Shown: piece by piece, positions 18,118 through 46,667 of the stretch
Position numbering within the stretch: the stretch's first letter is position 1
Layout: each line of letters starts with the position of its first letter
Source: Octopus sinensis
Lineage: Eukaryota
DNA length: 47,992 bases
Assembly: GCF_006345805.1 (NCBI RefSeq)
Contig: NW_021834887.1
Coordinates: 1 to 47,992, forward strand
Direction: 5' to 3'
Notes under the pieces: generated by a model
The model's database searches: none
What the model was told of the DNA's origin: nothing
Seen by the model: the letters and a program-made list of their open reading frames with translations, nothing else
Made by a program: the position numbers and the translations under genes

Positions 18118-18223
18118 TTACTCAGTCTTTGCAGGTCTCTCTGCTGCAAATCGGATCAGTCTTTGAGCCAGAGTTGAACGTCTGATGTCGTCACTTGATA
18201 TGTCACTACGTTTTTTCTTGCCG
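18118..18223 (-). CDS. PTH-like neuropeptide precursor, last coding exon: (x)GKKKRSDISSDDIRRSTLAQRLIRFAAERPAKTE*
   Basis: Acceptor gtttctttacacttagttttacttacgattttag|C, phase 2. Open to TAA at 18120-18118, with a donor 12 nt after the stop. Begins with a Gly plus polybasic amidation/cleavage signal. Confidence 0.85.
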
Positions 18224-20899
18224 CTAAAATCGTAAGTAAAACTAAGTGTAAAGAAACCAGTGTAGGGAAAAAATGTCTGGTTACTAAAATTTTATCAAAT
18301 TAAGTGGAAAGATCTCGCCAGTAATTAATTTTAACTTTTCAAATCAAAAGCTGTTGGAAAGATGTGTGTTTGTGAGTTTGTGTGTGAGTGTGTGTGTGTG
18401 TGTACTTACCTCAAAAATATAACAGTGCAGCATCTCTTTTCTTAAATATAATTAATTGTTTAAGCTAAGATTACAAATTTATTACCAATTTATAACTACG
18501 GAACTAAGATTATGTTTATAGCTTACAAACGAAATCGAAACAGTATCATGAATTATGGACATTAATAAGTGATTATTATCTATAAAAAAAAACACTCGAT
18601 ATTGTTCAATTTTATAATCGTTATAGTTCACTGGATCGCCAACGAATGTTGTACTTTCCTGTTATTTGTGAAAGGTCTTTGCCTTAAGTTATAGAAGCCA
18701 ACCTGTAAAAGGGATATTAAGTTGCCCCTTTCCCCAGGAGACTCGAGATAACATCTTGGACAAATGGTAGCAATCTATCTAGGCTACTCATCTAGGTTTA
18801 TGCTGAATTCTAAAGCCAGGCAAAACTGTTGGACAAGTGTTATATATTCCCTTCAACTGTGGATTGAGGATGGTGGCTACTCTCAATATTGGTATTTTAA
18901 TATCAAGACACTAGGTACGACATTAGACCAATTCTCCCTCAATTCTCCTGATGCAATAGAATATCATTGTACTGTGTAAAAATGGAGCACTAATAGATTT
19001 ACTTGTCCTTCGCATCATTCATAGTAAGTCTGCTTACATCAACATATCAAAGCAGTAGCAGCGATCGACGGATGCTCTATTTCCGTTTTTCAAAGGCTTT
19101 TATTAGGCCGATTTGATAACTGTTTAGTTTTAAACGAAATGTAAAAGTATTACATGAAATAGAACCTACATTGCCAGCGCAACTTGCCAATTTTCGACTA
19201 TCTGTAGAATTTGCTATAATTTAAGTTCATTTTCATTTTTGGATGAGGTATTAACTTATGATCATAATTTCTGACTTGAATTCCTGAATCAGACAACATA
19301 TTACGAGTACCTGTTGCGTGCTAGTGCAATCCTCTCTTTTACTCCAGCTGTCACATCCCGGTTATTCCACCAGGTTAAGAATGAGAGGATTCCTCAAAGG
19401 ACTTCCCTGACTGCTCATGACAACCTAGGCACCGAAATCGACGAGCATACGCATGAATTACGTTACCAAGTCTTACTCGCACGTGAATGACGACTGGTTA
19501 CGTGAATGACAACTGCTGCAGCTATTGAACTTAATGTCAACCCTGATCGAATAGATCTTATCCGATGATAAGACGTGCTCCAGCATATGAAATTTTCTAG
19601 ATACAATATGTCTAGGACAGTATTATCTAATATGTTAGAACGCTTTCATTTAAGGGGGATTTGGCTACTATTTCTGATTTTATTTCCTTATTGTAAGGTT
19701 TTTTGAGACAGTGCTTCGCAATTTATTTTCAGAGATCGTTCAAAAATTACAGCTCATGGTGGAGATTTAAGTAGCATATATTATATTTTGTATTTTATAT
19801 ATAACTTGTTGAAATCGCAATATGTCAGGTCAGATGTGCATGAAAAAAATTACATTATTGAAACAATATATTTCTTGTTTCGTGCCATATTGAAAATCAT
19901 GATCAACATTTCATGAAAATTGCTGGCAAGTATTCATTGTTGTTCAATGAGTTACCACAGAGAATAGCGAGAAATTCTATTAAATTGAAGAGATTTCGGC
20001 TACCTTTCAATATTGAGTTAAACTAAATCTACACGAGTATAGCTGAGGGAACTATAACACTCTTATGGGTGATTGAGCTAACATTGACTGTCTCACTAAG
20101 AAAGCAATTGATAGAAAATGATCGGCTGTAATACCAATTATAGAAACAGGGTCCTGCTAACTCGCAAAATATAAAATACGACTATAAAATAATATGATAT
20201 ATAATATGATATATTAGTATATAATCTATATATGTTATATTAACATTATATGCATATATATATATATATGTGTGTGTGTGTCTGTGTGTGTGTATGTATA
20301 TATAATTATATTAATATCTCATATCTAATTTACTATAAAAATTACAATAGAATATAAAATAATTTCTTATATGTGTCTGAGCTTGTTATGCTTATGTTTA
20401 ACGATTTAGAAACTAGTGTTCAAGACTGTTAAATATAAACACGACAGGTACACACACATACACTTATATCTTCGCAATCATTCATAACTTGAGATTATAT
20501 ATTGTATAGCAATAAAAAATAAAATCTATTTTCCTTTAAGCAATTTTCTGTACTTCGAATATTTATTTATAATTCGATTAATTGTTGTACTTCGATCAAT
20601 GTGTTTTTTCTTCTCTCGAGTAACTGTTTTCGATCACGTGTATTTCAATCGTTTCCGGGAAAATTGACAAGCCGTTTATCTCAATGCTGATTTCATACAT
20701 CTTCTCTACTATCCGGATATTAGTTACTCTGTCTTGCAATGTATATTTAGTTAAGATAGAAAACTTTAAAGGGTTTCCCAACAAACCAATCGGATTAAGT
20801 GACATAATTTACTCAGCCACAACTACCACCAATACCACCACCTACACTACCACCACCACCACCACCGACGGCACCTCCACCACAGCTACTACTACTACA

Positions 20900-20942
<43 letters not shown>

Positions 20943-21766
20943 TCCTGTGGCGATTGTACCGATACTGCCAAGAGCTTTTGTATAGAAAGAGATAAGGATA
21001 TAGAAAATAATTCAATATTAATCACGAGATCGACCAAGTGCACAAAGTCATCATGTACGTGTATGTGTGTTTTATGCGCACATGTCTCTGTATGTGTTAT
21101 ATATAAGTGCGAACTTCAATTCAAAGACTGTTGTATGTATGTATTTTTGTAATTATGTATGTATGTATGTATGCATGTATGTATGTATTATATATGTATG
21201 TATGAATGCATGTATGTATGTATGAGCGCTTAACAAACCGTAAAACGGTCAGGCATGACACTTCTCTTTTGTTTCTCTGCGCATCACAGGTAGAGAAAAA
21301 TGTGTCTACATGCTAAATATTTCTCTTAAAGTCAGGTCCTCTAATATTTATATTTATTTCAGTGTTTCTGACTCATACTGTTTTATGCATATAATATCTG
21401 TTAAAGACGACTCGTCAAAAGCACAATTATATAAACTAAGCAATCCACCACAGTTATAGCCTAATTATACCTGCTTTATATAGCAGCTGATATTAGTGAT
21501 TGAAAACGAGTATATATCTTAGCGGAGAGGTCAACAATCCGTGAAATGATCATAAGAAAACTCCACTTAGATTTTCTGTTCATCGAAAGCATGGGACCCG
21601 GTTACATGAAAGGAAGAGCTTGAAATATAAAGAACTAGTTAGAAATGGCAGGGATAGAGGCCTTCTAACTGATGTGGGTTGCCATGGGTTAGCAGCTAGG
21701 TCTATTATGTCCTGCTTAGCTCATTTGCTTTTAGCTAGCTCTTGAGATAGAGTGGTAACTAATTTG

Positions 21767-21810
<44 letters not shown>

Positions 21811-21937
21811 TACAGCACATATGTGTTATTTATCTATCTATCTATCTATCTATATATATATATATATATATATGTTTACCGAATTTGTGTAATGTGTATA
21901 GAATAAATATATCAGTTATATAAACAATTGCATCGTG

Positions 21938-22121
21938 AGATGTTTGTAAGCCATTTAAGAACTCACAAAAACCGTTAGTTTCACTTCAACATTTAAATAC
22001 ACAAAATGTTGTCAATGAACAGGTCGCGGTTTGGAAGCGATGAAAATATTTTGACACAATTTAATTTAAATGTTGAAGTGAAACTGACGTTTTTTTTGGC
22101 CTAAATGGCTGACAGGCATCT
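21938..22121. mobile_element. MITE with about 55-60 bp imperfect TIRs
   Basis: agatgtttgtaagccattta...gtttcacttcaacatttaaat paired with atttaaatgttgaagtgaaac...taaatggctgacaggcatct. Confidence 0.75.
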
Positions 22122-22759
22122 TCCTCATTGCAATTGTTTTTGCTTCAGCACACGATCTTAGATCAATGTTACTTGCAATGCAGGTACATCTCCGTAGTGT
22201 GTGTGTGTGTCCTCTGACGTATTTTGTAATATGCATTCGTGCTTCTGTGAGTGTATGTTTGCATGGGAATTGTTAGATTTCAGAACACGTTTGCGAATGG
22301 TTGTGTATTCTAGTGTGTATGATATATATATATATAATATATTATATATATATATCTATATATATAATATATATATATATATAATATATATAATACATAC
22401 ATACATAATACATACTATATATATATATATCTATATATATATATATATATATATATACATACTACATACATACATACATACATACATACATACAATATAT
22501 ATTCATGCACATATATTATTAAGAGAATATCTTCTATAAAGCATTCGATTGTGAAAGACATTATCCATATAGAAAAAATTAAATATACTATAATATATAT
22601 ATTTTTAATCATAATTAAAGAAACATTAAACTGACTCCGCGCATTTGGGGACTATATCTTTAAATCGATAATGATAAAATCGATCTATTAAAATAAATTC
22701 GATTTAAAATGAATTCGATTTAAAAATTATGCCACTTTCAGTGGCTATATTAACAATAA

Positions 22760-23869
22760 TCTTTAGCCTTGAGAGTTCATGACCACCTTAGCCTTGTGAC
22801 ATGGGGTTGTCCTGCATGAATATGGGTGATCGCTTAGTTTTGAATTTCTCAGCACAGGCAAGACATGATCTTTTACAAGTGTTTTAAACTCCTGCATTTA
22901 CCTTCCATGTAATCGCACCAAAGGGCCCCACACCATCTCCAGATATCATCCCCCAAACCATGACACTTCCTCCACCGAATTTACACTAGTCTTAAGGCAT
23001 TTAGGCGACAATTTTTCACCTACTTTTTGACAAACGTACCTTTTCCCATCTGACCCAAATAACAAATTTAGATTCATCCCGGAAATGCACCCGTTTGCCA
23101 TTTTTCTTGAGACCACAACATATGTTCGGTTGCAAAGGTAAGACGACATTTTTTATTCTTGGAGCTGATTAGTGGCTTCACTGCAGGTGCTCTTGCTTGT
23201 AGGTCATGTTCAACTAAACGACAACACACAGTTTTTTCGAAATAAAGTTTTCTTCAGTACAATGCACATTTCCAGAGAAACAGCAGCAGCAGTTTTAAAT
23301 CTGTCCTTTTTAACCAACTTTACCATAGCACGATCTTCTCTGTTGGTCGTTTTTCATGGCCTACCTGTAGACTTTCTTGCTTCACACGAACCACAATCAT
23401 CGTAGACCTTAAGAATACCGTGAACAACACTTTTTCACTTGTTAACAATTTTGCAATAGACCCAATACTTAAATTATCCTTCTTTCGAAGCTTATAATCT
23501 GCTGACGAATTATAACGGAGTAAGTGGCATTATATTAACAAAGTACACTGCAGATACTCTTACTAATGTTTAGTAAATAAAACCGTCGAGTAAACAATTC
23601 AAAGCATTAGAGTTCACCGGTTAAATATAGTAAAACATGAAGTAAAAGCAAACGTTCTGATCATCTTGGCCGCCGTGGGTTTGGCAGTAAATCACTAAAT
23701 CATCCATACTTTTGTATTATCCTCTCAAATTACAACAAAATCTCAGACAATAACAATTAATATCGTATTTATTGTCTGTGAAAATTATAGAAAATAACCA
23801 GTTCTATTAAAATTATATCTACCTTTTCTGACAAAAACAATGCCGTTCTGAACATTTTGGCCGCAACTG
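22760..23869 (-). mobile_element. Tc1-like transposon, 3'-truncated, transposase pseudogene
   Basis: TA plus CAGTTGCGGCCAAAATG TIR at 23871-23853. Reading STGRP*KTTNREDRAMVKLVKKDRF...KPLISSKNKKCRLTFATEH...NLFGSDGKRYV...GGSVMVWGMISGDGVG...IFMQDN. Confidence 0.85.
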
Positions 23870-24104
23870 TATATACACGTTGAGGCTGTAAGTACGTACG
23901 CATGTTTGTACATATGCATGTGCGTTTTGTAAGTATGAATTTATGCATGTATATATATATGTCTTTACATATGTATGCATCTAAGTATGTCTGTATGAAT
24001 TACGTATGCACGCGTGTATTAATTATACATATATATGTATGTACGTATATATGTATGTATGTATCTATCTATGTATCTTCATGTATGTACACATATGTTG
24101 AAGC

Positions 24105-24871
24105 ACTGTGACGTTAGAGTTGGGTGCGTTAATTGTAAACATCTGCAAGGTGAAATATTGGAAGAGTGGCGAATGTAGCACATAAGGCACTCTTTAGAAC
24201 GTGTGAATATAGCGTAATTAGAGATAAGCTAAATCCGTTTTGACAAGATGTACATAGCATCACGGTAATATATAGAATACATAGCCATGCTATGCTGATA
24301 GGGTGTACGTTTACAGGGTGCTCTAAAAGTAACAAAAAAAGGATAAATCCATGTGTCACATGTGAAGAAACATGCCTTTGTCTTGGTGAACACGATGTAA
24401 TCAAACTTTGACGCAGTGAAACAATAAAAGATATTGAAAAAAAGGGGAAGAGCATGTAAAGAAACAGTACGGCTTGTCGTAGAATGAATAAGATTATTTA
24501 GAACAGAAATGAAATATCAAATTTTCAAAATGCATAGAGTAAAGAATTAAAGAGAATTACATACCATGAAAGGAACATTTGGACATGACGTAATATAAAT
24601 TGACATGATAAAAAAATAAAATATGAGACTTGACGAATGAAAAACATCACTAGACGACGTGGAATAAATAAGATACTTAAAGAAAAGTCACACGTGACGC
24701 ACTGAATACAATCCGGAAAATAACAGAAAAACAAAAATATATGGAACTAATTAACAGTCAGTTCATACTCCGAACAAAACAAGTTTACATCACACAAAGA
24801 AGATCCACGTTGTGGCATAGTGAACAGTTAGGTGTAACGCAGTGAAGCTGCATCATATATACAAATGTATG

Positions 24872-24902
<31 letters not shown>

Positions 24903-25790
24903 ACATGATGTTATGATACAATTTTTTGACGTAACAGAAAAGGACTGTGAAATACTTGGAAACGGCACACGGCGAAACGAAATTGTGACAGCGAGACAGT
25001 ACTTAGAATAAACATATTAACATAACGTCGTAGAAATATATCTACATAGACAACATGAAGTAGGATACAGTATTCTATAGTGTAGAGAAAAATGAAAGGT
25101 ATGATATGACGAAGGATGAATAAGACAGTGTAACTTAGTAACATAAGTGAAATTGTGCAAAAGATCAATGTAATAGAGTGAGGATAAGACGCAACATAGA
25201 TCAGTGTACATTGTAACGTAGAATACAGACGGGGACATCAAACGTGACGTGAGAGAAAAGAATTGATCCAATATCAATGCAACGGAAAATAGGTGATCAT
25301 CATAGCGTGACGAAGGTGCAATGATGAACATGACGGAACGTGGAAGAAACATAATGTACAGCACGGCGGGACGTAATAGAAATAATTTGATGTGCAATAG
25401 AACAGTGATCGGCAGTGAGACGAAGAAAGAACAAATGAACGTAACGCAGAGAATTACCTTCGGCATAATGTAGCAAACAGCGTTTGATGAAAAATATACG
25501 TAATAACAATACAGTATGACGTAAAATATACGAGATGAGGTGACGTAGAATCAGGAACAGCACGTTAATACGTATGAAAAATGATAGAACATAACGTACA
25601 AAAGAACAATCTTGGTGTGACGTAATGATCCACGGTGTTTGACGAAGAATAAAACTGTACCAAACGTATAGTAAAAAACAACACACCCTAACGAATTAAA
25701 CAGTCACACCGTGACGTATAACACACAGCACGGCACAGTGTGACAACAGACGAACACTGTGTGATTTCTTGACGGACAGTACGACTATGA
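24105..25790. repeat. Highly decayed pentanucleotide (ACGTA/ACATA/ACGAA-like) array
   Basis: Recurrent acgta, acgtg, acata, acgga, acgaa and acaga words in register, with strong A bias. It produces hydrophobic junk ORFs on the minus strand. Confidence 0.55.
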
Positions 25791-25828
25791 GTGTAGCGCT
25801 GATGACAGAGAACATTTCGAATACCTAC

Positions 25829-25927
25829 ATTTCAGCAAAGTCAAATTGGCCATGACCAGCCACTTTGCTCATGGCCTTAAGAGCTCTTAATTCGGCTATC
25901 CTCTGGTCGAAGGATGTCCGTTTACCG
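25829..25927 (-). CDS. PTH-like precursor peptide exon 3: (x)GKR-TSFDQRIAELRALKAMSKVAGHGQFDFAE(I)
   Basis: Acceptor aaatttctgattttacttcag|C and donor AAT|GTAGGT; 99 bp, phase 2-2. The DQRxAEL...GxG..D...IG pattern matches what I recall of the iPTH/PXXXamide family. Confidence 0.9.
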
Positions 25928-26006
25928 CTGAAGTAAAATCAGAAATTTCATTTAAGAAAGACTCCAAAGAAATACACACTGACGAACCTCGTAGAAACAG
26001 ACTCAC

Positions 26007-26061
<55 letters not shown>

Positions 26062-26302
26062 AACGCACACGCACACACATACACGCAATCACAGATACAC
26101 ACGCATGTGTATGTACATACATATATACAATATATTTAATATTAAATCTATATAACAATACATATGTAATTTGTATTATTACATATTATATATGTATACA
26201 CACACACACATATGCACACATTTACATCCATACACGCTCACACACAGGAACACGCATATAAATATATACATACACACACAAACACACACACATATATATA
26301 TA

Positions 26303-27142
26303 CAGTGTGCAGTGAATAAATTGTCGTCTAAATTACGAAAAAATGAAAGTAACACTGACATCTCATTTTAATAGATATATTGACCAAAATTACATAGACT
26401 TTCTTGACATACTAAAGAATAGATTATTTAACAAAATCGCCATTAGCTTCAACCATGGCCCCCAGACAACTTCGGAATCTCCTGCAACTCTCCTGGACGA
26501 TCACCTTTTTTAAGTTGGTGAATGCTGCCATGATCCTTCCCTTTAGTTCATCTTTGGTGTTACAAGGAGTTTTGTTGGCCTCTCGGTCAAATGCACCCCA
26601 CACGTAATAATTAAGACGGTTGTAGTCTCGGAAGTTATGTGGCCAGATATTTGGGGTGATGGGGTCGCAGAAATTGTCCTGCCTATATGGTATGGTGTAG
26701 TATCGTGTTGCCAGACATATGGTCTCCTAGATGTCACCCGCTTCACCCAGGGCAGCACTAGCTCCTCCAGGCACTTAATGTAGGCCTTTCGTGTTGAGTC
26801 TGAGGCCCCGTGGGATGATGAATGGAGGCGTAAGCTCGCCGTCACTAGCGATCACTCCAAACACCATGATGTTGACTAGATGTTTGATTTTTATCGCTCT
26901 CAGTACATGTCCTCAGATTGACACACAAACACTCTGAAATGTTCCTATTGGAGCTTCTGGCACGAATGTCAAACAGTACAGCATGTCGTTTCCAAATTTC
27001 AGGGAGAGTGAATTGCGTCATAGTGCTGTTTTTCCCACAGACGGTGCCCAACTGATCCTACTATACTGTGTAGTCGATAAAATTAAAAACGAACTATGCG
27101 AATGCTCGAACTTAAAACTATATAGTGGCGACAATTTACTCA

Positions 27143-27148
<6 letters not shown>
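26303..27148 (-). mobile_element. Internally deleted Tc1/mariner-superfamily (DD37D/maT-like) transposon
   Basis: Imperfect TIRs (ta-cagtgtgcagtgaataaattgtcg / cgacaatttactcatctgtg-ta). Reading NIMVFGVIASDG..PPF..GLRLNTKAYIKCLEELVLPWVKRV..RPYVWQHD; the N-terminal HTH joins directly to the catalytic region. Confidence 0.8.
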
Positions 27149-27213
<65 letters not shown>

Positions 27214-27225
27214 TCACTCACGCGC

Positions 27226-27287
<62 letters not shown>

Positions 27288-28366
27288 CACACACACACAC
27301 ACATGCACAAATACTATCCCCTCACACAAACCAATATACCATATAAATTTATGCTGAAATAATTGAAAGTATGATATTAACATGTTATAAACAATTGCAA
27401 TAAATCAAATCATTATATTTTGACAGGCATATTATACAACAATACAGAAGAATGAATATTTTCAAAAACAATGGTTTTGGTGTCATCATTTTACCACAAT
27501 TTTTATAATCGAATTTGGTTTTCATGTTAATGATTCTTCTTTCACCTAACAGAAGAAAATATAGAGAAGTAGGGCAATAAAACAATATAATATCTGGCTC
27601 ATATTTAAGTACAGTATATTAGTGGTATCTCAGTGTGGATCTTATTGCAGTAGTTCGTTCATTCGTTTGTTTGTTCGACGCAACATCTATATTCTGCTGT
27701 GTGATGTAGAAAACAATACAATGATAGGAATATGATTAGGTTACAGAAATTGAATATACGAGTTAATTAGATGAGATTTAAACAAAGAGAAGAAACAGAA
27801 AGCATTTGGAAATGTCATTTCGGAGTGGCTAGAAGCAGCAATATAGTAAACAGGAACCAGTTCGTATTATATACATCACTATAAGCATGTAAAGCGCTCC
27901 CTGTCCACACAGACAAATAAACAAAAATGACCCAAACATACACTTCAAGTCCATGCATGTAAATGGGTAAGCATATGTATATGTATATACATACACACTC
28001 ACACACACATCCACACATCCACACACACATTCAATATATCGTTGTAGTTGTGATTGTGATAGCCCATACCATAACAGTGTCGGAAGTGCAGAGTGAGAAT
28101 ACAGAAGGACTCTAATGAGATTAACTCAACTTCAGGAGATTTAACAGCACAAAGCAAACGACTTAATAAGGTCTACTTTTTAATGGCTGATATTTTTCAT
28201 GGTAAATCACCTACGCATAAGATAATGTAATTAAATATTTTATAAACAAACTTTGTTTTAACTTTCATTATACATAATACATACATGTATGTATGTATAT
28301 ATGTATGTATGTATGTCTACATACGTATGTATGTATGTATGTCTACATACGTATGTATGTAGACAG

Positions 28367-28848
28367 ACATAGTTGTGGTTTAGCTTCCCCGCCAAAAAGC
28401 ATGCTAAGACTTAGTGGAAACTGATACTGCATATAATATTTGCTGCAGCATATTAAATTTATAAATTCATAAATGAGGGTGAAAAATTAGAAATTAATTT
28501 AATAATACCATCAGTTTAACACCAAGTGGCCTAGCACATAAAATGTTATTTCTTTTGTGGAAACAACTTCGGTGGCTATACCAGAATAAGGAGCTATTTC
28601 TAGCACTAGAGTTAACCACTTAACGTTAACTCTCTTATATTTACGTATAAATTTGTACTGTCTCCCTGGTTTTTTATGTGCTAGGCCACTTGGTGTTAAA
28701 CTGATGGTATTATTAAATTAATATCTAATTTTTCACCCTCATTTATGAATTTATAAATTTAATATGCTGCAGCAAATATTATATGCAGTATCAGTTTCCA
28801 CTAAGTCTTAGCATGCTTTTTGGCGGGGAAGCTAAACCACAACTATGT
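28367..28848. repeat. Long inverted repeat: 177-bp arms (28367-28543 and 28672-28848), 128-bp spacer
   Basis: The arms are reverse complements with one mismatch that I could find (agaaatt vs agatatt). Confidence 0.95.
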
Positions 28849-29037
28849 ATGCAATCGATCAGACCGCACGGGTATTTATCGCCCGTGAGGGTCTGATAAA
28901 TTGAATCGAGGACAAATGCTGCCGATGACTTATAGACAAATATGTGAGTATAATTGCATATTATGTTGATAAAGAAACAATTGTTCAGCATTAATCTATC
29001 TTTTCGTTGTATTTCGCTTTCCTTACGTTGAAGGTAA

Positions 29038-29245
29038 TGTTATTTCTTTTGTGGAAACAATTTCGGTGGCTATACCAGAATAAGGAGCTATTTCTAGCAC
29101 TAGAGTTAACCACTTAACGTTAACTCTCTTATATTTACGTATAAATTTGTACTGTCTCCCTGGTTTTTTTATGTGCTAGGCCACTTGGTGTTAAACTGAT
29201 GGTATTATTAAATTAATATCTAATTTTTCACCCTCATTTATGAAT
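29038..29245. repeat. Direct copy of the spacer plus the first ~75 bp of the right arm (28544-28750)
   Basis: Near-identical at an offset of 494-495 bp; ends in a (TA)n tract. Confidence 0.95.
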
Positions 29246-29673
29246 ATATATATATATATATATATACTACCCTATTTAAGTAGATTACAAAGGACAAGAT
29301 CATGCGTGTACAAGGGAAATATAATAAAAATAAATATAAGGGTGTAAATATGTTTTTAATACCTACAGTAACTGCAACATTATCTATAATTACAGTAATA
29401 ATACTCAGTTAATGATAAATCAGATGCAAAACTAAGCTACACAACTGTGTGTTTGTGTGTTTATGTGTGTGTCCGTGCCCCTGTCTGTCTATAAGTATGT
29501 GCATATGACAGTGTATATATATATATATATATATATAAATATATATATAATTATAACAATAAGGGTTATTTGCAACAAGTTGCTTAACCACATACCGAAA
29601 ATTTTATATATATATATAAAACTATAGACATATATATATATATTTATAGAACTATAGACACACACACACACAC

Positions 29674-29731
<58 letters not shown>

Positions 29732-30702
29732 TATATATATATATATACATACATATGTATGTATATATATGTTATGTGTATAGGTAGATAGATTGGTAAT
29801 TATGAGCTGATAATATTTTCAAATGCACACACACACACACAGATACTCTGCCCACCCTTCTATTCAATGACGTTTTCTGTTACGTTGAAGAACGTGACAT
29901 AGGAAAGGAATGTCGATATAAGTAGAAAAAATATATGAAAATAAGACACAAAGAACACGACAATATTGAGAACAACAAACGAGAAAAGAACTGAAACGGA
30001 AACATAAAAAAAAGAGGGACCCCCAACAGCAACAGAACATTTAAACAGCAACAATAACAAGCAGAAAGAAGAACAAAGATAAGACGGATTGTAAGTAATA
30101 GCAAAATTGAAAATATAAGTGATTGAAATAAGAGTAAAGATATATTGATTACAACAAAAACGATAATGATAAATATAAATAGCAGCTGAACAATAGAAGG
30201 CAGTACAAACTTTAGATATAGCAACATATAGCTACGTACAGATATGCATACACACACTCAAGCATACATACAAATACACGCATACACACACATACAAACA
30301 TATATAAACACATACACACATATCATTTGATGTACACTGTACTACAATATGAGCTAATAGGAGTTTCAGGCTCTGAGCTCATGTTTTGTTCTATTTGAAA
30401 AATATAACAAGCCACGGACTCAGAGCATAAAGGGTAGTTTGGAGACACAAGGTACGTTATAAAAACCTATCTAACAACGTGTCTTCATGTCAAGAAACTA
30501 TAAATAGTTCTTATTTTAATACCATGTATATTAAAAGATATTTATATTTCACACCGGATGGAATATCTGTTGTTTGATTTGTAACAGAACAGTAAACTAT
30601 ATATCCATATTCATATATATATATATATATATATATATTATTATAGATATATATATATATATTATATGCTATATATATATATATATATATCTATAATATA
30701 GA

Positions 30703-30743
<41 letters not shown>

Positions 30744-30749
<6 letters not shown>

Positions 30750-30984
30750 TACACACTATGAGAGAGAATCCACTATATGGAACGCTCTTACGCTAGATAG
30801 ATCCGCAAGGGACTCAACCACTAAGAATTGTTCTCACAAAATAATTCAACACACCAAGTGTTGAATTATTGGTTCGTTGAATTATTTCTTGAGAACAATG
30901 CTTAGTGGTTGAGTCCCTTTGCCGATCTATATCTGCGTAAGAGCTTCCATATAGTGGATTCTCTCTCATTGTTGTGTATTAATA
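30744..30984. mobile_element. Foldback MITE with about 105-bp arms
   Basis: taatacac..tgagagagaatccactatatggaa...ataattcaac paired with gttgaattat...ttccatatagtggattctctctca..gtgtatta, embedded in (TA)n. Confidence 0.8.
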
Positions 30985-31733
30985 CTATTTACTGAATCTC
31001 AGTCTTTATACGCAAGGCGCTGGTTTTTAAATTGATATTATAACTTAATATCCAATTTTTCACCCTTTTTTTGACTATATATATATATATATAATATATA
31101 TATATAATATATATAATATAATATAATAATATATATATATATATATATATTTACATATATATATATATCTATTTAATAAATATATATAATATATTTATAT
31201 CAATATATAAATATATTCATTATATATGCAGCACTATGTATATTGTATATATGCGTGTGTGTGTATGTGTGTGTGAGTGCATGCGTGTGTGTACGTGAGT
31301 GCATGCGTGTATGTGTGTGTGTGTCACACACACTAGGTCACACGAGGCTACACTAGACCACAAGTGTCCACAACCACCAAATATTTTCGTTTCTCTGTCG
31401 CAGTACTCTTTTAGTCAAGTAATCCTTATACCGAGCACCACTTTTCCACGTGTTATGGAATGACAATGAGGGACGCAACACATATCACAATGCCAGGTTT
31501 TACACCGGCAAGCATTTAAAAACTTTTATGGACACATACACATATACACATGGTGTCATACACAGACTAATACATAGAATCATTTTCAAAAGTGTTTTTC
31601 AACCGAATATTATCTATAGCTTTATATGTACTCCGAGATTCCAAAAAGAGTGTTATTCCACGCTCTCTTGAATGTTCATAAAATTCTCATTAAACAACAT
31701 ATACATATACATACATAATACATACGTATAGTA

Positions 31734-31792
<59 letters not shown>

Positions 31793-31887
31793 ATCCAAAC
31801 AAGAAAACACAAAAAAAACACAACAACGCGAGGATGTGGAACAAATATAGTATTATTGGACGCTCAGGAATGAAGGGAAGAAGGGGG

Positions 31888-31922
31888 GTTTAACGTTTCG
31901 AGCGGAGCTCTTCCTCGGAAAC
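31888..31922 (-). ncRNA. Minimal hammerhead-like motif within a short Penelope-like terminal repeat remnant (about 31789-31991)
   Basis: Minus strand GTTT-CCGAGGA-A-GAG-ctccg-CTC-GAAA-CG-TT-AAAC; one core change (U4 to C). Confidence 0.5.
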
Positions 31923-31988
31923 ATAGGAGAAGGAAAGATCCAGAGAAGGGAGACAGAGGAAAAAAAATCGCCAACGGTACACACGAGG

Positions 31989-32059
<71 letters not shown>

Positions 32060-32068
<9 letters not shown>

Positions 32069-32210
32069 TTAGAGACAAAACCACTATTTTGCAAAACAAA
32101 CAATGAAACATTGTAGTGGCGGTTTTTACTTTTCATAAAAATTTTATGTATTGATTAAGTCTTTCCTTGTATGTTTTGCAAAATGGTGGTTTTGTCTCTA
32201 ATTAATATTA
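32060..32210. mobile_element. MITE-like element with 39-bp TIRs
   Basis: taatattaattagagacaaaaccactattttgcaaaaca paired with tgttttgcaaaatggtggttttgtctctaattaatatta (1 mismatch). Confidence 0.75.
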
Positions 32211-32289
32211 TATAATATTTTACTATAAAATTGGATTTAATCCTAAATCTGATTTTTTCCCTGTAAATTTGGATTTATTCCCTAATATT

Positions 32290-32342
<53 letters not shown>

Positions 32343-32560
32343 CAGCACAGTATAGATAGACCAGACTATCAAATGTTGTTGTACACCGTTGATCACAGTG
32401 CGCTTTCTCATTGTGTTAGCTCCCGAATGATGCCACCACAGTGCTTATACGGGAAGACCTATATTACTCTTAAATGGAACCCTGGTTTGTAGCAGGGGCC
32501 TCCATTTTCAGTTGGGTGGATTGTAATACATACCTTCATACATACCTACATACATATATA

Positions 32561-32621
<61 letters not shown>

Positions 32622-32813
32622 TACATAAATACATGCCTATATACATATGTACAAACACGCAAACAACATTTATCAATCAACAAATTGAGAAGGGAGAGCA
32701 ATGTTACTGGAGGGTAGAACATAAAACTTTGCGTCTTTTCTATTCCTGAAAATGGATTTTTCATGGCTTAGCAGGATTTTGGCTTTTACTGTTTTTTTTG
32801 TATTTTACTGTAC

Positions 32814-32933
32814 CTGGCGTTTATATCGACTACCCCACAGGCAACCTCGACACAACCCGGTGGTACAGTGCCAATAAGTGCTAACCATGCTTGGTATTCA
32901 GCTGTTTTAACATCGCCTGTCTGGCGCTTCGAT
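32814..32933 (-). CDS. PTH-like precursor cassette exon 2b: (x)SKR-QTGDVKTAEYQAWLALIGTVPPGCVEVACGVVDINA(S)
   Basis: Acceptor gtgttgttttacctatttacag|A and donor CAG|GTACAG; 120 bp, phase 2-2. Dibasic site, N-terminal Gln and C-x4-C motif; paralogous to exons 2a and 3. Confidence 0.9.
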
Positions 32934-33574
32934 CTGTAAATAGGTAAAACAACACACAAATGGACATCAACAATAATGACAGAACAATTTGACAGGTCGA
33001 TAAGAAACAAACGTTATAAATACGAGAAGGAATGCGAAGGAAAATTGCACATATCAACGTAAAAGGTAATGACAACAAAATAAAATCAATACTGCTTTTT
33101 GTAATAACATAACAATTATAATGTGACCAACTATGTGAAATGTGAGGAACGGGTATCATTGGATAAAGATAACTATAGAAGAGGCAATGGAGTTTTACTG
33201 GAAATGGAGGTGGTTGGTAGGGTAGCACGATATTCCTTTAACAAATGGTCGAAATATTTACTTAAATATTACTATATACACGTGCATATGCGTGTATGTG
33301 TGCGTAAAATGGCCATATATATATACTTGTACATTAATATCTGTGTATATGCATATACTATTTATATGCATTAAATGATCTATGGAAATTGAACTCCGAG
33401 TCTGCTGTAATGTGTATAGCCGTGTTAACTACGACACAAGAGTGATAAATTATTTAGCTACCTAAATCAGAAGTTTAACCAAGCCATATTAGCGGCTTAT
33501 GAAGTGTGAACCTCAGCCCACACAGTATGAAGGTAGAGTACTATGTATAATATACATATATAAGCGTGTGTGTG

Positions 33575-33623
<49 letters not shown>

Positions 33624-33851
33624 AATATTTATGAATGAAATGGTACAAAAATTTGAACTGTAAAAATTGAATCTATCATTGCTACGTTATTAATTATTGG
33701 TATAACACAAAACACGAAAAAAAATATTAACAATGTAATGCATTGACCATTTACTTAAGGATTTGAGGCGGGTAAGTGAGAAAGGGCTTTGGTTTAGGTC
33801 TTGACTAGGTAAAAGGATAGTGTTTGGGGGTTGAACTAGAGCTTACTATAC

Positions 33852-33965
33852 CTCTTTTCAATATCAACTAACCCACACGCTACCTGGGTGCAGGTAATGT
33901 TTCTGGACAATGCCATCAGTGCCCGATACTCAGCCGCTCGCATATCAGCTAGCTGTCGTTTAAAT
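33852..33965 (-). CDS. PTH-like precursor cassette exon 2a: (x)FKR-QLADMRAAEYRALMALSRNITCTQVACGLVDIEK(S/R)
   Basis: Acceptor atttctacaacccctgcttacag|A and donor GAG|GTATAG; 114 bp, phase 2-2. Clear protein similarity to exon 2b (KRQxxD..AEY.A..AL....C..VACG.VDI). Confidence 0.88.
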
Positions 33966-34228
33966 CTGTAAGCAGGGGTTGTAGAAATGCATGCATTACA
34001 TAAGGTGTTCTGTTACATATTCTCTTTATATCATACATAGCTTGAACACTTTTCAAAAATATGATCCATATACCGAAATATATTTTTATGTCAAAATTGA
34101 ATCCATTACTTTTCATACAGTGTCTGACTTAACGAGAATTGTTTATAGTTGCTAAGCCTGGACCACTGCACAAATTAGCTTAACAGTCTGTGGGTTACGT
34201 AACATTTTCTACTTAGCTAATGGATACC

Positions 34229-34459
34229 TATTTTTTTATTACCCACAAGGGGCCAAACACAGAGGGAACAAACAAGGACAGACATAGGTATTAAGTCGAT
34301 TACATCGACCCCAGTGTGTAACTGGTACTTAATTTATCGACTCCGAAAGGATGAAAGGCAAAGTCGACCTCGGCGGAATTTGAACTCACAACGTAACGCA
34401 GACGAAATACCGCCAAGCATTTCGCCCGGCGTGCTAACGTTTCTGTCAGCTCGCCGCCT
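34229..34459 (-). mobile_element. tRNA-derived SINE (family 2)
   Basis: Minus-strand head aggcggcgagctgacagaaacgttagc...gagttcaaattccgcc, followed by the gtcgactttgcctttcatcctttcgg core. Confidence 0.85.
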
Positions 34460-34520
34460 TAGCTAATGGATAACATTTACTTAACTCATCAACCCTGTTC
34501 TCGGTGCTAGTCACTTAAGC

Positions 34521-34557
34521 AGACGCTGACGAGGGCGAGACAGCTTGAAGCTCGTCT
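34521..34557 (+). ncRNA. Degenerate minimal hammerhead-like motif
   Basis: AGACG-CTGACGA-GGGC-gagaca-GCTT-GAA-GCT-CGTCT. Intact CUGACGA and a 5-bp stem I, but the GAAA/NUH segment is one base short. Confidence 0.35.
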
Positions 34558-37500
34558 TCTTGTCTCCTTGTCCGTGTTTGTTCATCGTTTGGTTGCATAC
34601 ACTGAAGGCCTATTCCACAACTGATCCCAACATAATTTCAGCAAAGCACATGACTGGAACACTTAAAAGTATTTTTAAATGTTTTAATTCTATAATTATC
34701 CTTCGTGATACAGACTTCTTTTAAAATATGTTCAAATTTATACAAATCATGAGTCTATAAACAGAGCAATTTGACTGAACATAATCTTTGTTTATTTTTT
34801 GTTTTGTCACATACCTAGTTAGTTTTTCATCTGTCGTTAAAATCCGTATTGATCCATACATACTAATGGTTTAAAAAATTTTTCTCTTGATACCTGAAAT
34901 TGTTTTCGTTATTTAATTTCCAATGATAAGCTCTAATTCTTTCATTACATCTATGTGTATGCATTCAAAGTATCTTGCAATCTATAAGTTTCGTCTCTGA
35001 GTTCTCTTAAGTTCAAATCCGATTGGGATCTACTTTGATTTTGTTCCTGATAAAATAAGTACATGTCAAACATTGCAGTAGATTAAATCAACACTGATAT
35101 CATAAACTGTATGGCTTTAAGTTACAGTTGTTGGTAATTACCATTTACTGCCTCCCTTCTACTTAAGTTCACAACGCAGGCAAAACCCCATATAAATTTA
35201 TGTTCGATTATAAACTCGTATTTTAGGTAAACGATATACATTGTATATAAGGCTTAAACATTTATTTTATCTCTCGGCTTGTAAACATACATTCGCACAT
35301 TCATACATACATGCACATGTGTATATGTACATAAGTTTATATATCTGTATATATGTATGTATGTCTAGTAAGTTTGCTTTCTAATCACACTTCTCCTGTG
35401 CCTCAGATGCATCCAAACCTTTCGAAATTCCATAGACAGAAACTGTGTAGAAGCCGTCGGATGAACTGTATTTTCTAAGGAGGAAACTTAATCCAACGAC
35501 CGACGAATATCACTTGGTTGGCTTTTCACTTTGTTGCATGCATTCGGTCTGCATTCAGTAATGCCTAGCAAAAAAGGCATGACCACTGCTATTTCTCTTA
35601 CATAGACGTAACAAAATGTGAGAGGCTAATATGATACAATTATATGTATAATGTAAATAAGTGAATTATTACAGGTATCTTTAAAGGGCTAATGATTTGG
35701 TTCAGGGCCCGTATAAATAACGAGCTTCCCAGTGTCCCTAACAGCAGAATACCTTCAAAAATTCAGTTAAACAAGCAGTAGTAGGTCGATCTGTAAGGAA
35801 AATACCTCTGTTTCACTTACACTTACTCGACTTCGTGGGATGAGAAGGAGAAAGAGAAAGAGAAAGAGAGAGGAAGGGAGAGAGAGAGACGATGGGAAGA
35901 CAGTGGGCTTCTCTCTACCGTACGTAATATTCGTAAATCTATGATTTACTTTGAGTTGCCTGGAACCTTTACTGAAAGCAAGCACAAAATATTTAAATGA
36001 TGATTCGGGGTCATACTTTTTAACACTGTTAAGCGAATTTGACCTGACCGAGTGCTCTGTCACACTTCAAATTCATGATCAAGAGCCTACTTGCCTGATT
36101 ACAAAAAACAAGTGTAATCAAGTGTGTGTGTGCGCGCGCTTTGTAATTCCAATTCTACATATATACAATTATCAGTACTTTCTTCGTTTTTGAGAATTAT
36201 TCTCCTTTAAGCTTTCTTGCAATTTCCGTTATGCATCATACAATAAAAGCAGTATGTGTTTTAATGCCAGCGCAGAGATAATGCATTGAAACCGTAAAGT
36301 GTCGGCATTCTCAGCCAATTGTAACACATATTATAGCTGACTTATATGTCATCTTCCTATGTGATAAATCAAGTGAGTTATTAGATGTACGCAATTTCTG
36401 GCATTAATCAATAAACAGCTATTTCTATTCCTAAGCATCGAAACATTCTTCAAGAGTCTAAACATGGAGAACGTAAATTCCTCTTCAGGTTATATTTTTT
36501 ATTTAATATATTTTAATACCCAACTTATTACTCTGACTATGTTTGGCTAATTAAAATCATAAAGATCTCAAAAAATTGCATCACTGTGATCGATTTTGTC
36601 TGGATTGTAAGCTACAGATTTCATGCAGTGGCCTTTATGCTTTTAGTCATTCATAGCTGCTTCGTATCTTAGTAAGTAAATTTGAGTTTCCTGTTGCATT
36701 TGTAGCCTTTTATTGTTAGTTAATTATGTTTATCAGCTAATTAAGTACCATTGAAAAAAATCAATACGCAAGTGACAAAGAAAGTAAAATCTTTCCAAAC
36801 ACACATATAGTATATGTACTCTTTTACTTGTTTTAGCCATGAAGTTGCGGTCATGCTGGAGCATCGCATGCATACATACATACGTACACGCACACACACA
36901 CAAACATATATATATATATATATACATTCATACATACATGCTTAGTTTATTGTCATTCACCTGTATTACAAGATCGTAATGTTGCTTTCTGAACATCTTG
37001 CCGTAACTAAAAATCTGTGACATAATATACTTCTCCATTGAATTCCAAGATACATGGAAAGTATCTGGCAGAGATTTTTCTCGTCCGAAAAGAATCAAAA
37101 TATGTTCAGTTGGAGCGGATGCTTGAGTTTGTTCACAAGCTTCGTAGCGCGGTCTTTCCACTTGTCCTTGTTCGCTTGGAATAAAAATTAGCCGTTTCTC
37201 ATCTTGTATGAGGAATACCGAATGTCTTTATGCACTGTGTCGTTTTGCTTGTTTTGCTTTGTTTTCTTTGCTCTCGTCTCTAATTCTCGAGAAGAAAACC
37301 CTATTTTTGCGAGTAGCGCCAAGTGGGAAACACTCAGTCTTATCGGTGAAGGTGCGACACTGAATATTGGTCAATAACTGATGAAGAATTACGGATCTTC
37401 TGTTTGTCTCCCGTTCGTTTTTATATTCAGTATACGCTATGTCGTTTGTTTATTTACCTTACATTTTTTCCTTTCTTATATAGCGTCTTATAAAGCAAGA

Positions 37501-37769
37501 TTTATATATCCTAATTCTCGTTCGGGATGTTTAGCTTAACGGTAAAGCACTTGACACTTGACAGGGATGTGAATTCGAGTCTCATGGCTGGACACCGACA
37601 GATTTTTCTGTATAATGTCGATAGTTTATCCTGTTCATTCTATATTAATAGGATTATCCTGCGTCTGAGAATAAAATTATTTCCTTATCTGTATCTTTCA
37701 AACATCTCAACGCTTCTAAAGCAAACTTTGTTGACATTCAACGTAAGTTGAATTTAATATATACATATT

Positions 37770-38275
37770 TTTTTTTTTTTCAGTCATTTGAAAGCGGCCA
37801 TGCTGAAGCACCGCCTTTAATCGAACAAATCGACCCCAGGACTTATTCTTTGTAAGCCTAGTACTTAATCTAACTGCCTGAACCCGGAACCATGTGGTTG
37901 GTAGACAAGCTACTTACCACACAGCCGCGCTGTATGAGTTTGTATTATATATATAGAGAGAGAGGGATATAGATAGACAGACAGACAGACAGATAAATAT
38001 ATACATACATACATACATACATATACAACATACGTATATATATATACATATACATATATGTGTGTGTCTATGTATGTGTCTTTGTATTTATACTCTACCA
38101 TCGCTTTACAGCCAGTGTTGGTTTGTTTACGCCCCTGTTAATTAATGGTTCAGCCTAAGAGACCGATAGAATAAGTAGCAGACTTTTAAAAAAGATAAGC
38201 ACTTCGGTCGAGTGGTGCGGCTAAACCCTTCAAGGTGGTGCCCCAATATGGCCGCAGTTAAATGACTGAAAAATT
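37770..38275. mobile_element. Two SINE family 1 fragments in opposite orientation (about 37780-37930 minus; about 38100-38275 plus)
   Basis: Matches to the 3' half of 8678-9084. The first fragment is fused to a head fragment. Confidence 0.7.
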
Positions 38276-39191: not shown

Positions 39192-39350
39192 TATGTATAT
39201 ATATTTTTTATTACGAATGCAAAACAACACCACTGAGGAATCAACGTAAGATTGAATAATAAACCGCGATAGGTGAATCGCTATATGGTGAGGGATTACT
39301 GTATTTAAATTTCTTTGCTTACAAATATCTTATTTACGAATTATTATTTT

Positions 39351-40646: not shown

Positions 40647-40647
40647 T

Positions 40648-40674
40648 TTATTATTATTATTATTATTATTGTTG

Positions 40675-40737
<63 letters not shown>
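40648..40737. repeat. (TTA)n tract between RLE copies A and B
   Basis: Visible directly. Equivalent tracts lie at 42747-42813, 43272-43357 and 43801-about 43897. Confidence 0.95.
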
Positions 40738-40739
<2 letters not shown>

Positions 40740-42746: not shown

Positions 42747-42813
<67 letters not shown>

Positions 42814-44207: not shown

Positions 44208-44296
44208 TTCAATTCTTCTTCTGGGATATATCGTGCATTTACAAGAGAAACTAGCACCATGCCAACAATGCTAAGTATTAAAATGTGTCGTGTCAT
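44208..44296 (-). CDS. PTH-like precursor first coding exon, signal peptide: MTRHILILSIVGMVLVSLVNA-RYIPEEEL(K)
   Basis: Acceptor cttctctcatttgatttcag directly precedes ATG; donor GAA|GTAAGC; 89 bp, ending phase 2. Basic N-region, hydrophobic core and V-N-A cleavage motif. The phase matches all downstream exons. Confidence 0.85.

Positions 44297-46665: not shown

Positions 46666-46667
<2 letters not shown>

What the first reader, a model, noticed from the sequence alone, without database searches (positions are those of the whole stretch)
18223..33965. Split-signal design: every peptide's amidation and cleavage signal is donated by the next exon
All introns are phase 2 and all peptide exons are multiples of 3 (114, 120, 99 bp). 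Each intron falls in the codon of the last peptide residue, and exons 3 and 4 both open with C-GGN-AAR (x-G-K-R/K). Any peptide exon spliced to exon 3 or exon 4 is therefore amidated, and all 8 inclusion patterns stay in frame. Splicing alone could set both peptide repertoire and amidation state. The architecture also records origin by tandem exon duplication.
Basis: partly seen in the sequence, partly recalled or inferred. Interest (0 to 1): 0.8.

Follow-up and report, generated by a model that had tools for sequence, protein, structure and literature searches.

The report
Octopus QSamide/iPTH neuropeptide gene exons
This is an octopus copy of a known neuropeptide gene (QSamide/PXXXamide, the invertebrate "parathyroid-hormone-like" peptide); each peptide exon stops just before the glycine-plus-basic processing signal carried by the next exon, an arrangement that is ancient and whose alternative splicing is already described in oyster.

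Summary
On the minus strand lie five coding exons: 44296-44208, 33965-33852 (2a, 114 bp), 32933-32814 (2b, 120 bp), 25927-25829 (3, 99 bp) and 18223-18118 (4). All introns are phase 2. Exons 3 and 4 open C-GGN-AAR. All 8 inclusion patterns stay in frame. One correction: 2a joined to 2b gives Arg-Ser-Lys-Arg with no Gly, so that product is not amidated.

The window is an Octopus sinensis scaffold (RefSeq LOC118761766, modelled as 1-2a-4). The gene belongs to the QSamide/PXXXamide (iPTH) family. Exon 3 encodes the iPTH-type peptide. Exons 2a and 2b encode Cys-loop QSamide-type peptides.

The design is not new. The same phase-2 intron before a Gly-basic exon occurs in a gastropod, a bivalve, an annelid and a wasp. 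In oyster, differential splicing of this gene is published, giving amidated and non-amidated "-like" peptides.

What is specific here is a GTT-to-GGT change that gives exon 3 its Gly. It occurs only in this fast-evolving paralogue and its O. vulgaris orthologue. It makes amidation less dependent on splicing, not more.

Octopus isoforms are known only from gene models, not transcripts. Verdict: new member of a known kind, moderate interest.

The parts
44208..44296 (-). First coding exon (89 nt): start codon, signal peptide MTRHILILSIVGMVLVSLVNA, then RYIPEEEL and 2 nt (AA) of a split codon. Donor is gtaagc.
   Evidence: It is identical in protein to exon 1 of P0002, P0003 and P0004. The ATG follows an acceptor site, so a 5' non-coding exon is expected upstream.
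33852..33965 (-). Exon 2a (114 nt, phase 2-2): F-K-R cleavage site plus a diverged QSamide-type Cys-loop peptide, QLADMRAAEYRALMALSRNITCTQVACGLVDIEK, then AG.
   Evidence: It is used in RefSeq models P0004 (this locus) and P0003. It is 100% identical to the paralogue L001. It was not found in the Argonauta locus.
32814..32933 (-). Exon 2b (120 nt, phase 2-2): S-K-R cleavage site plus the canonical QSamide-type Cys-loop peptide, QTGDVKTAEYQAWLALIGTVPPGCVEVACGVVDINA, then AG.
   Evidence: It is about 70% identical to gastropod QS-type peptides. It is used in models P0002, P0005 and P0006.
25829..25927 (-). Exon 3 (99 nt, phase 2-2): opens C-GGT-AAA-CGG (x-G-K-R), then the iPTH/PXXXamide-type peptide TSFDQRIAELRALKAMSKVAGHGQFDFAE, then AT.
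   Evidence: hhalign of tick iPTH against the family profile aligns to this segment (probability 92.7%, E 4e-7). The Gly codon is GTT (Val) in L001 and L002.
18118..18223 (-). Exon 4, coding part (106 nt): opens C-GGC-AAG-AAA-AAA-CGT (x-G-K-K-K-R), the shared amidation and cleavage signal. It then encodes the conserved C-terminal peptide SDISSDDIRRSTLAQRLIRFAAERPAKTE and the stop codon.
   Evidence: An N-GGN-basic opening of the last exon is also seen in Pomacea and Argonauta and in Capitella, Mizuhopecten and Microplitis.
32934..33851 (-). Intron between 2a and 2b (918 nt).
   Evidence: It is long enough that steric exclusion of the two exons is not forced.
18224..25828 (-). Intron between exon 3 and exon 4. 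It contains a Tc1/mariner transposase remnant.
   Evidence: Pfam HTH_Tnp_Tc3_2 at 23077-23229(-), E 2e-9.

Best explanation
The window holds a paralogue of the Octopus sinensis QSamide/PXXXamide gene, the invertebrate PTH-like (iPTH) gene. It is a secreted neuropeptide precursor.

Its parts are a signal-peptide exon, three symmetric phase-2 cassette exons, and a last exon. Each cassette exon is a module of a basic cleavage site followed by one peptide. Exons 2a and 2b encode QSamide-type peptides with a C-x4-C loop. Exon 3 encodes the iPTH-type peptide. The last exon begins Gly-Lys-Lys-Lys-Arg.

Each cassette exon ends two bases into the codon of its peptide's last residue. The downstream exon therefore supplies three things: the third base of that codon, the Gly (or its absence), and the basic residues. 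From established knowledge, prohormone convertases cut at the basic site, carboxypeptidase E trims the basic residues, and PAM converts a C-terminal Gly into an amide.

This arrangement is ancestral to protostome iPTH genes. Exon duplication within it produced in-frame cassette exons that are alternatively included, as shown in oyster and annotated in gastropods.

In most lophotrochozoans only the last exon carries Gly. There, a QS peptide is amidated only when its exon is joined directly to the last exon. In this octopus paralogue a GTT-to-GGT change gave exon 3 a Gly as well. QS peptides joined to exon 3 are therefore also predicted to be amidated.

Shown here: the anatomy, its conservation, family membership by sequence, and the variety of gene models. 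Inferred: actual splicing in octopus, peptide processing, and receptor (PTHR-type class B GPCR).
For: - Exon and intron anatomy, and all 8 in-frame products.
- Identity of the locus: P0004 (RefSeq LOC118761766, O. sinensis, on a 47,992-bp contig) equals my predicted 1-2a-4 product.
- Family: a profile search found 85 relatives in molluscs, an annelid and insects. The motif SDQRLAEL led to the tick iPTH preprint. hhalign of tick iPTH against the octopus/Pomacea profile gave probability 92.7%, E 4e-7.
- Naming: PXXXamide equals iPTH (PMC7224569). iPTH/PXXXamide equals QSGamide (PMC8557429).
- Prior art: alternative splicing of the oyster QSamide3/PXXXamide gene, with peptides detected by mass spectrometry (PMC8398477).
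- Conserved intron position: the phase-2 intron lies in the last-residue codon and is followed by N-GGN-basic in Pomacea and Argonauta and in Capitella, Mizuhopecten and Microplitis.
- Exon 3 opens with Val in L001 and L002, Thr in Argonauta and Val in Pomacea. No Gly is seen at internal junctions of other lophotrochozoan precursors.
- Different exon sets appear in models of the same or orthologous genes.
- The coding sequence has no indel, although 4-5 would be expected at the intronic indel rate (P about 0.01-0.02).
Against: - No octopus cDNA or RNA-seq could be examined. The isoform evidence in Octopus is gene models only, and the O. vulgaris models are clearly imperfect: P0001 lacks a signal peptide, and P0006 spans 102 kb.
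- The window copy evolves fast. Between O. sinensis and O. vulgaris there are 10 nonsynonymous changes and 1 synonymous change. Constraint on it may therefore be relaxed.
- The Pro at position -4 that gave PXXXamide its name is absent here (FAEI).
- Pfam has no model for the family, so membership rests on profile and pairwise similarity.
- No lophotrochozoan receptor pairing has been shown (PMC8557429).
Confidence: 0.8

Rival explanations
1. Exons 2a and 2b are mutually exclusive alternatives. Exon 3 is a simple skip-or-include cassette. Only about 4-6 of the 8 patterns are then used, and the 2a-2b junction, the only non-amidating one, never occurs in vivo.
For: No RefSeq model contains both 2a and 2b: P0002, P0003, P0004 and P0005. 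Both exons end in AG, so both give a C-terminal Ser-amide with exon 3 or 4. Their donors, gtatag and gtacag, lack the consensus G at position +5, which is typical of regulated exons.
Against: The 918-nt intron imposes no steric exclusion. Joint inclusion stays in frame and creates a valid KR-S-KR site. The O. vulgaris model P0001 joins 2a-2b-3, though that model is poor. Other molluscs encode two QS-type peptides in one precursor: P0009, P0013 and P0015.
Confidence: 0.4
2. The window copy is a young duplicate under relaxed constraint, poorly expressed or on the way to loss. On this view the Gly at the start of exon 3 is a neutral substitution with no functional meaning.
For: pN/pS is at or above 1 for the window copy against both its orthologue and its paralogue, and all 9 changes in the peptide exons between O. 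sinensis and O. vulgaris are nonsynonymous. The RefSeq model of this locus skips exons 2b and 3. The copy sits on an unplaced scaffold.
Against: All five exons are open and all splice sites intact in both O. sinensis and O. vulgaris. There is no indel in 528 nt of coding sequence, where 4-5 are expected at the intronic rate. Exon 3 differs from the paralogue at 15% of sites, against 2.4% mismatches in surrounding non-coding DNA. That is faster than neutral and points to selection or an older origin, not decay. The Gly is shared by two species.
Confidence: 0.2
3. There is one constitutive transcript (1-2a-2b-3-4). The variety of database models is then annotation noise.
For: Ab initio and homology-based models often drop short exons. 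No octopus transcript was inspected here.
Against: Oyster transcripts and peptides show real alternative splicing in the homologous gene (PMC8398477). Pomacea and Gigantopelta have RefSeq isoforms X1 and X2. A transcript-sized Logan contig (988 nt) encodes a 1-3-4-type precursor, P0008. No database model shows the full five-exon form with a signal peptide.
Confidence: 0.08

Closest known systems
Crassostrea gigas QSamide3/PXXXamide gene (Realis-Doyelle et al. 2021, PMC8398477)
   Same: It is the same family. One gene carries QSamide-type and PXXXamide-type peptide exons. Differential splicing gives QSamide-only, PXXXamide-only and mixed transcripts. Amidated forms and non-amidated '-like' forms depend on what follows. 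Peptides were detected by mass spectrometry.
   Different: The text of that paper does not mention intron phase or the split Gly-basic signal. The octopus gene has two QS exons and one iPTH exon. Oyster has several PXXXamide exons. The window copy has a Gly at an internal exon start, which the lophotrochozoan precursors I inspected lack.
Arthropod iPTH (Tribolium, Xie et al. 2020, PMC7224569; Ixodes ricinus, bioRxiv 10.64898/2026.06.22.733765)
   Same: The exon-3 peptide shares the S-D-Q-R-(I/L)-A-E-L N-terminus, the (A/V)-x-G-x-(I/V/F)-D core and a C-terminal Ile-amide signal. The wasp gene has the same AT|gt ... ag|C-GGC junction. These peptides are ligands of PTHR-type class B GPCRs.
   Different: The Tribolium, tick and wasp precursors inspected or described carry a single peptide. 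They have no Cys-loop QS-type exon and no reported alternative splicing. The Schistocerca precursor P0076 carries two iPTH-type peptides. Receptor pairing is untested in molluscs.
ITP/ITP-L and CHH/CHH-L alternative splicing (PMC11035804, PMC13267572, PMC7560641)
   Same: The choice of downstream exon decides whether the hormone ends in an amidation signal.
   Different: It is an unrelated family of six-cysteine hormones. There, alternative exons replace the C-terminal part of one peptide. They do not add or remove whole peptide modules.
Vertebrate multi-peptide genes with one peptide per exon (proglucagon, VIP/PHM, calcitonin/CGRP); recalled from general knowledge, not tested here
   Same: Peptide-per-exon modules arose by exon duplication. 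The ligands act on class B GPCRs. In calcitonin/CGRP, splicing selects the peptide.
   Different: I have no evidence that their amidation signals are split across an intron in this way. There is no sequence relationship.

Membership tests
iPTH / PXXXamide neuropeptide precursors | Signal peptide, then a basic site, then a mature peptide with a conserved N-terminal S-D (SDQR[IL]AEL) motif | tested here: met
   Exon 1 has an N-terminal hydrophobic signal-like segment. Exon 3 encodes KR-TSFDQRIAEL.... The motif is described in PMC7224569 and is present in tick iPTH.
iPTH / PXXXamide neuropeptide precursors | [quoted passage not shown] | tested here: met
   ...FDFAE-I-GKKKR is formed across the exon 3/exon 4 junction.
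iPTH / PXXXamide neuropeptide precursors | Pro at position -4 from the amidated C-terminus (the name-giving PXXXamide) | tested here: not met
   The window has F-A-E-I, the paralogue V-D-A-I and Argonauta F-D-D-I. Pomacea keeps P-L-R-I. Xie et al. call this residue only 'mildly conserved', so it is not a strict criterion.
iPTH / PXXXamide neuropeptide precursors | Significant sequence or profile similarity to functionally characterised iPTH | tested here: met
   hhalign of tick iPTH against profile A2: probability 92.7%, E 4.2e-7. BLASTP of the exon-3 peptide against tick iPTH: E 3e-5. The octopus/Pomacea profile retrieves insect proteins (Schistocerca, Microplitis) at E about 1e-4 to 9e-4.
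iPTH / PXXXamide neuropeptide precursors | The peptide activates a PTHR-type class B GPCR | not testable with these tools
   This is shown only for Tribolium and Ixodes. It is stated to be unproven in Lophotrochozoa (PMC8557429).
QSamide / QSGamide peptides (Lophotrochozoa) | A roughly 35-aa peptide after a basic site, ending in Ser-amide and related to PXXXamide, encoded in a precursor of the same organisation | tested here: met
   2a or 2b joined to exon 3 or 4 ends ...EKS-GK / ...NAS-GK. These peptides are 50-70% identical to mollusc precursors ending ...(Q)S-GKKKR, for example P0019, P0022 and P0035. I could not compare them with the original Platynereis QSamide sequence.
Alternatively spliced QSamide/PXXXamide gene (oyster type) | Several transcripts from one gene that include different peptide exons | tested here: inconclusive
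   Gene models of the two octopus paralogues and their orthologues use 1-2a-4, 1-2a-3-4, 1-2b-3-4, 1-2b-4 and 1-4.
CRF/DH44 family (suggested by UniProt names of P0017 and Capitella ELT91968) | Match to the CRF domain model | tested here: not met
   No Pfam CRF hit for the whole precursors or the exon-4 peptide, even at E up to 1-10.

The most novel reading that the evidence does not exclude
After duplication of the octopus QSamide/iPTH gene, one copy (this window and its O. vulgaris orthologue) was rewired at the processing level. Exon 3 first changed its opening base from A to C, turning the junction residue from Arg into Ser. That change is shared with the sister copy. A later GTT-to-GGT change, found only in this copy, created Ser-Gly-Lys-Arg. 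As a result a single transcript can now yield both an amidated QS peptide and an amidated, strongly diverged iPTH peptide. Exon 3 differs from the paralogue at 15% of sites, against 2.4% in flanking non-coding DNA.

More generally, the split junction codon may act as a conserved, splicing-coded processing switch in this family. AG|A gives Arg and a furin-type site. AG|C or AG|T gives Ser followed by Gly and an amide.
Probability: 0.3. Interest if true: 0.5.

Novelty: new member of a known kind. Interest (0 to 1): 0.35.

Why it matters
The finding gives a simple genomic explanation for why the same gene yields "QSamide" in some transcripts and a non-amidated "QS-like" peptide in others. The amidation glycine lies in the downstream exon, and the last residue is a split codon.

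This arrangement dates back to the common ancestor of molluscs, annelids and arthropods. It also assigns two unnamed octopus loci ("uncharacterized protein") to the iPTH/PTHR signalling system, which has not been studied in cephalopods.

It does not reveal a new kind of mechanism. Splicing-dependent peptide sets in this family, and splicing-dependent amidation elsewhere (ITP/ITP-L), are already documented.

Tried and rejected
- Pfam scan of the assembled precursor and two orthologues: no meaningful hit.
- Full-text search for the octopus peptide strings: nothing. Only the arthropod-like motif SDQRL led to the family.
- CRF/DH44 membership, hinted at by UniProt names: rejected, no CRF domain found.
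- Calcitonin/DH31, PDF and ELH were considered from memory because of the Cys loop, helix and amide. I dropped them once the iPTH link was found. They were not formally tested.
- Search for exon 2a in the Argonauta locus: not found.
- DNA-level similarity between the 2a and 2b units or their flanks: none beyond the splice sites, so this duplication is old.
- Haplotig explanation for the window: considered unlikely. O. vulgaris has a window-type locus (L003) and a sister-type protein (P0006) on one chromosome sequence. I could not fetch the second O. vulgaris locus.
- AlphaFold model of the precursor: mean pLDDT 49.5, too low to use. It only hints at helices in each peptide and a hairpin at the Cys loop.
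- Flanking-intron conservation as a signature of alternative exons: at or only slightly above background, so not informative.
- Cardoso et al. 2024, cited by the tick preprint, is not in the library.

Full report
**1. Observation**

The gene lies on the minus strand. A scan for AG...GT-bounded open exons of 114, 120 and 99 nt found exactly one convincing candidate of each length. Reading the boundaries gave the following:

- Exon 2a, 33965-33852: ttacag|A TTT AAA CGA ... AAG AG|gtatag.
- Exon 2b, 32933-32814: ttacag|A TCG AAG CGC ... GCC AG|gtacag.
- Exon 3, 25927-25829: cttcag|C GGT AAA CGG ... GAA AT|gtaggt.
- Exon 4, from 18223: ttttag|C GGC AAG AAA AAA CGT ...; stop codon at 18120-18118.

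A signal-peptide exon lies at 44296-44208. It encodes MTRHILILSIVGMVLVSLVNARYIPEEEL and ends AA|gtaagc. All four introns are phase 2, and each internal exon is a multiple of three. All eight inclusion patterns translate to a single open frame.

Junction codons are as follows. 2a or 2b joined to 3 or 4 gives AGC (Ser), followed by Gly and basic residues. Exon 3 joined to 4 gives ATC (Ile), followed by Gly-Lys-Lys-Lys-Arg. Exon 2a joined to 2b gives AGA (Arg), followed by Ser-Lys-Arg with no Gly.

**2. What the locus is**

The assembled precursor matches eight database proteins. One of them, P0004, is RefSeq LOC118761766 of Octopus sinensis. It sits on a contig of 47,992 bp, the length of this window, and equals my 1-2a-4 product.

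A second O. sinensis gene, LOC115211866 (P0003), lies on a chromosome and is modelled as 1-2a-3-4. O. bimaculoides LOC106873782 (P0002) is modelled as 1-2b-3-4. I fetched both loci (L001, L002). Each contains all five exons with the same lengths, phases and order. The differing models therefore reflect exon choice, not exon content.

The window is collinear with L001. In non-coding sequence it shows 2.4% mismatches plus many indels. It is closer to an O. vulgaris locus, L003 (1.7% mismatches), which has the same exon-3 Gly. O. vulgaris also has a sister-type protein, P0006, on the same chromosome sequence. I therefore read the window as a paralogue ("copy W") of the chromosomal gene ("copy C").

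**3. Family**

Pfam finds nothing. A profile of four orthologues, searched against 1.84 billion representatives, found 85 relatives. Source names place them in gastropods, bivalves, the annelid Capitella and insects such as Schistocerca and Microplitis.

The shared motif SDQRLAEL occurs in a 2026 preprint on tick iPTH (SGISDQRLAELETLAGLKSLRHRLKGISFPVAYGLVDPNKI-amide). That peptide activates two PTHR-type receptors. hhalign places tick iPTH on the exon-3 segment of the profile (probability 92.7%, E 4e-7).

Xie et al. 2020 showed that iPTH is the peptide first described as PXXXamide in the cuttlefish Sepia officinalis. Thiel et al. 2021 equate iPTH/PXXXamide with the lophotrochozoan QSGamides.

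Exon 3 therefore encodes the octopus iPTH-type peptide. Exons 2a and 2b encode the related QSamide-type peptides. These have a C-x4-C loop and end in Ser-amide when followed by Gly. Exon 2b is the canonical form, about 70% identical to gastropod peptides. Exon 2a is a diverged copy.

**4. How old and how general the split signal is**

I read exon boundaries in other species:

- Pomacea and Argonauta.
- Capitella, Mizuhopecten and the wasp Microplitis.

In every case the intron after a peptide exon is phase 2 and sits inside the codon of the last residue. QS-type exons end AG|gt. iPTH-type exons end AT|gt, or GC|gt and GT|gt in Capitella and scallop. In every case the last exon opens N-GGN followed by basic codons. 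The wasp junction, AT|gtaagt ... cag|C GGC CGC, is almost the same as the octopus one.

The split signal is thus the ancestral architecture of protostome iPTH genes, not a design of this gene. Each cassette exon is a module of a basic site plus a peptide. The basic site that opens a module also closes the preceding peptide.

**5. Splicing**

Realis-Doyelle et al. 2021 describe the oyster QSamide3/PXXXamide gene. [quoted passage not shown] It yields transcripts for QSamide3 alone, PYKIamide alone, PYKI-like plus PALIamide, or QS3-like plus PIKIamide. The peptides were detected by mass spectrometry. The "-like" names correspond to peptides that are followed by another peptide exon rather than by the Gly-bearing last exon. 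The text of that paper does not mention intron phase or the split signal.

RefSeq lists Pomacea isoforms X1 (1-2-3-4) and X2 (1-3-4), and an isoform X2 in Gigantopelta.

For Octopus I have only gene models: 1-2a-4, 1-2a-3-4, 1-2b-3-4, 1-2b-4 and 1-4. Exon choice in octopus is thus likely but not shown. Use of all eight patterns is untested. No RefSeq model joins 2a to 2b, so mutual exclusion of 2a and 2b is a live alternative.

**6. What is specific to this window**

In copy C (O. sinensis and O. bimaculoides) exon 3 opens C-GTT-AAA-CGG (Val-Lys-Arg). Argonauta has A-ACT-AAA-AGG, and Pomacea has A-GTC-CGT-AGA. The other lophotrochozoan precursors I inspected also lack Gly at internal junctions. 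Copy W, in both O. sinensis and O. vulgaris, has GGT. The Gly is therefore derived.

In copy C and in other molluscs, a QS peptide is amidated only if exon 3 is skipped. In copy W it is amidated either way. Only the 2a-2b junction changes the outcome.

Copy W also evolves fast. Between O. sinensis and O. vulgaris there are 10 nonsynonymous changes and 1 synonymous change. Exon 3 differs from copy C at 15 of 99 sites, against 2.4% in non-coding DNA. Even so, the coding sequence has no indel where 4-5 would be expected. I read this as divergence under selection rather than decay, with moderate confidence.

**7. Mechanism**

Shown: the anatomy, its conservation, and the family assignment.

Inferred from established processing rules: signal-peptide removal, convertase cleavage at KR/KKKR, trimming by carboxypeptidase, amidation of Gly-extended ends by PAM, a probable N-terminal pyroglutamate on the QS peptides (they start with Gln), and a disulfide in the C-x4-C loop.

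Inferred from arthropod work: signalling through PTHR-type class B GPCRs.

The structure model was too poor to add anything.

**8. Verdict**

The gene is a new, unnamed member of a known family. Splicing-dependent peptide output in this family is already published. The derived Gly in exon 3 and the explicit split-codon logic are modest additions.

Noticed in passing
window 44296-44320 (minus strand); also L001, L002 and L005 at position 10001: The start codon directly follows a splice acceptor (tgatttcag|ATG) in all octopod loci. A non-coding 5' exon should therefore lie upstream, possibly within 44297-47992.
   Followed up: partly
window 23077-23229 (-) and 42300-42628 (-): There are transposon remnants inside the introns. 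One is a Tc1/mariner transposase HTH domain (Pfam PF01498, E 2e-9). The other is a weak reverse-transcriptase match (PF00078, E 0.013).
   Followed up: partly
window 33596-42810 versus L001 10391-19613; exon 3 at 25829-25927: Divergence between the two O. sinensis paralogues is patchy. A 9-kb block that includes exon 2a is 98.6% identical, yet exon 3 differs at 15 of 99 bases. Exon 3 of the window copy shares KVAGHG.FDF with Argonauta. The sister copy and O. bimaculoides share RVVGHGQ(L/I)DV. This suggests an older duplication followed by gene conversion.
   Followed up: partly
window 34814-34861 (-) and 24229-24393 (-): The O. vulgaris model P0001 uses equivalents of these two ORFs as first and last exon (MYGSIRILTTDEKLTR... 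and ...APCKRTPYQHSMAMY...). The resulting product has no signal peptide and no terminal amidation signal. It is probably an annotation artefact, but it could be an alternative terminal exon.
   Followed up: no
P0017 (O. bimaculoides, exon 1 + exon 4 only) and Capitella ELT91968.1: UniProt names both 'Corticotropin-releasing factor domain-containing protein'. Pfam finds no CRF domain in the exon-4 peptide or in the precursors. The exon-4 peptide (…RRS.LAQ.LI.FAAER…) is nevertheless conserved across molluscs and may be a product in its own right.
   Followed up: partly
L001 versus L002, all coding exons: Synonymous divergence between O. sinensis and O. bimaculoides in the sister copy (pS 0.024) is well below the non-coding mismatch rate (7%). 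This hints at constraint on the exon sequence itself, for example splicing enhancers. The counts are small.
   Followed up: no
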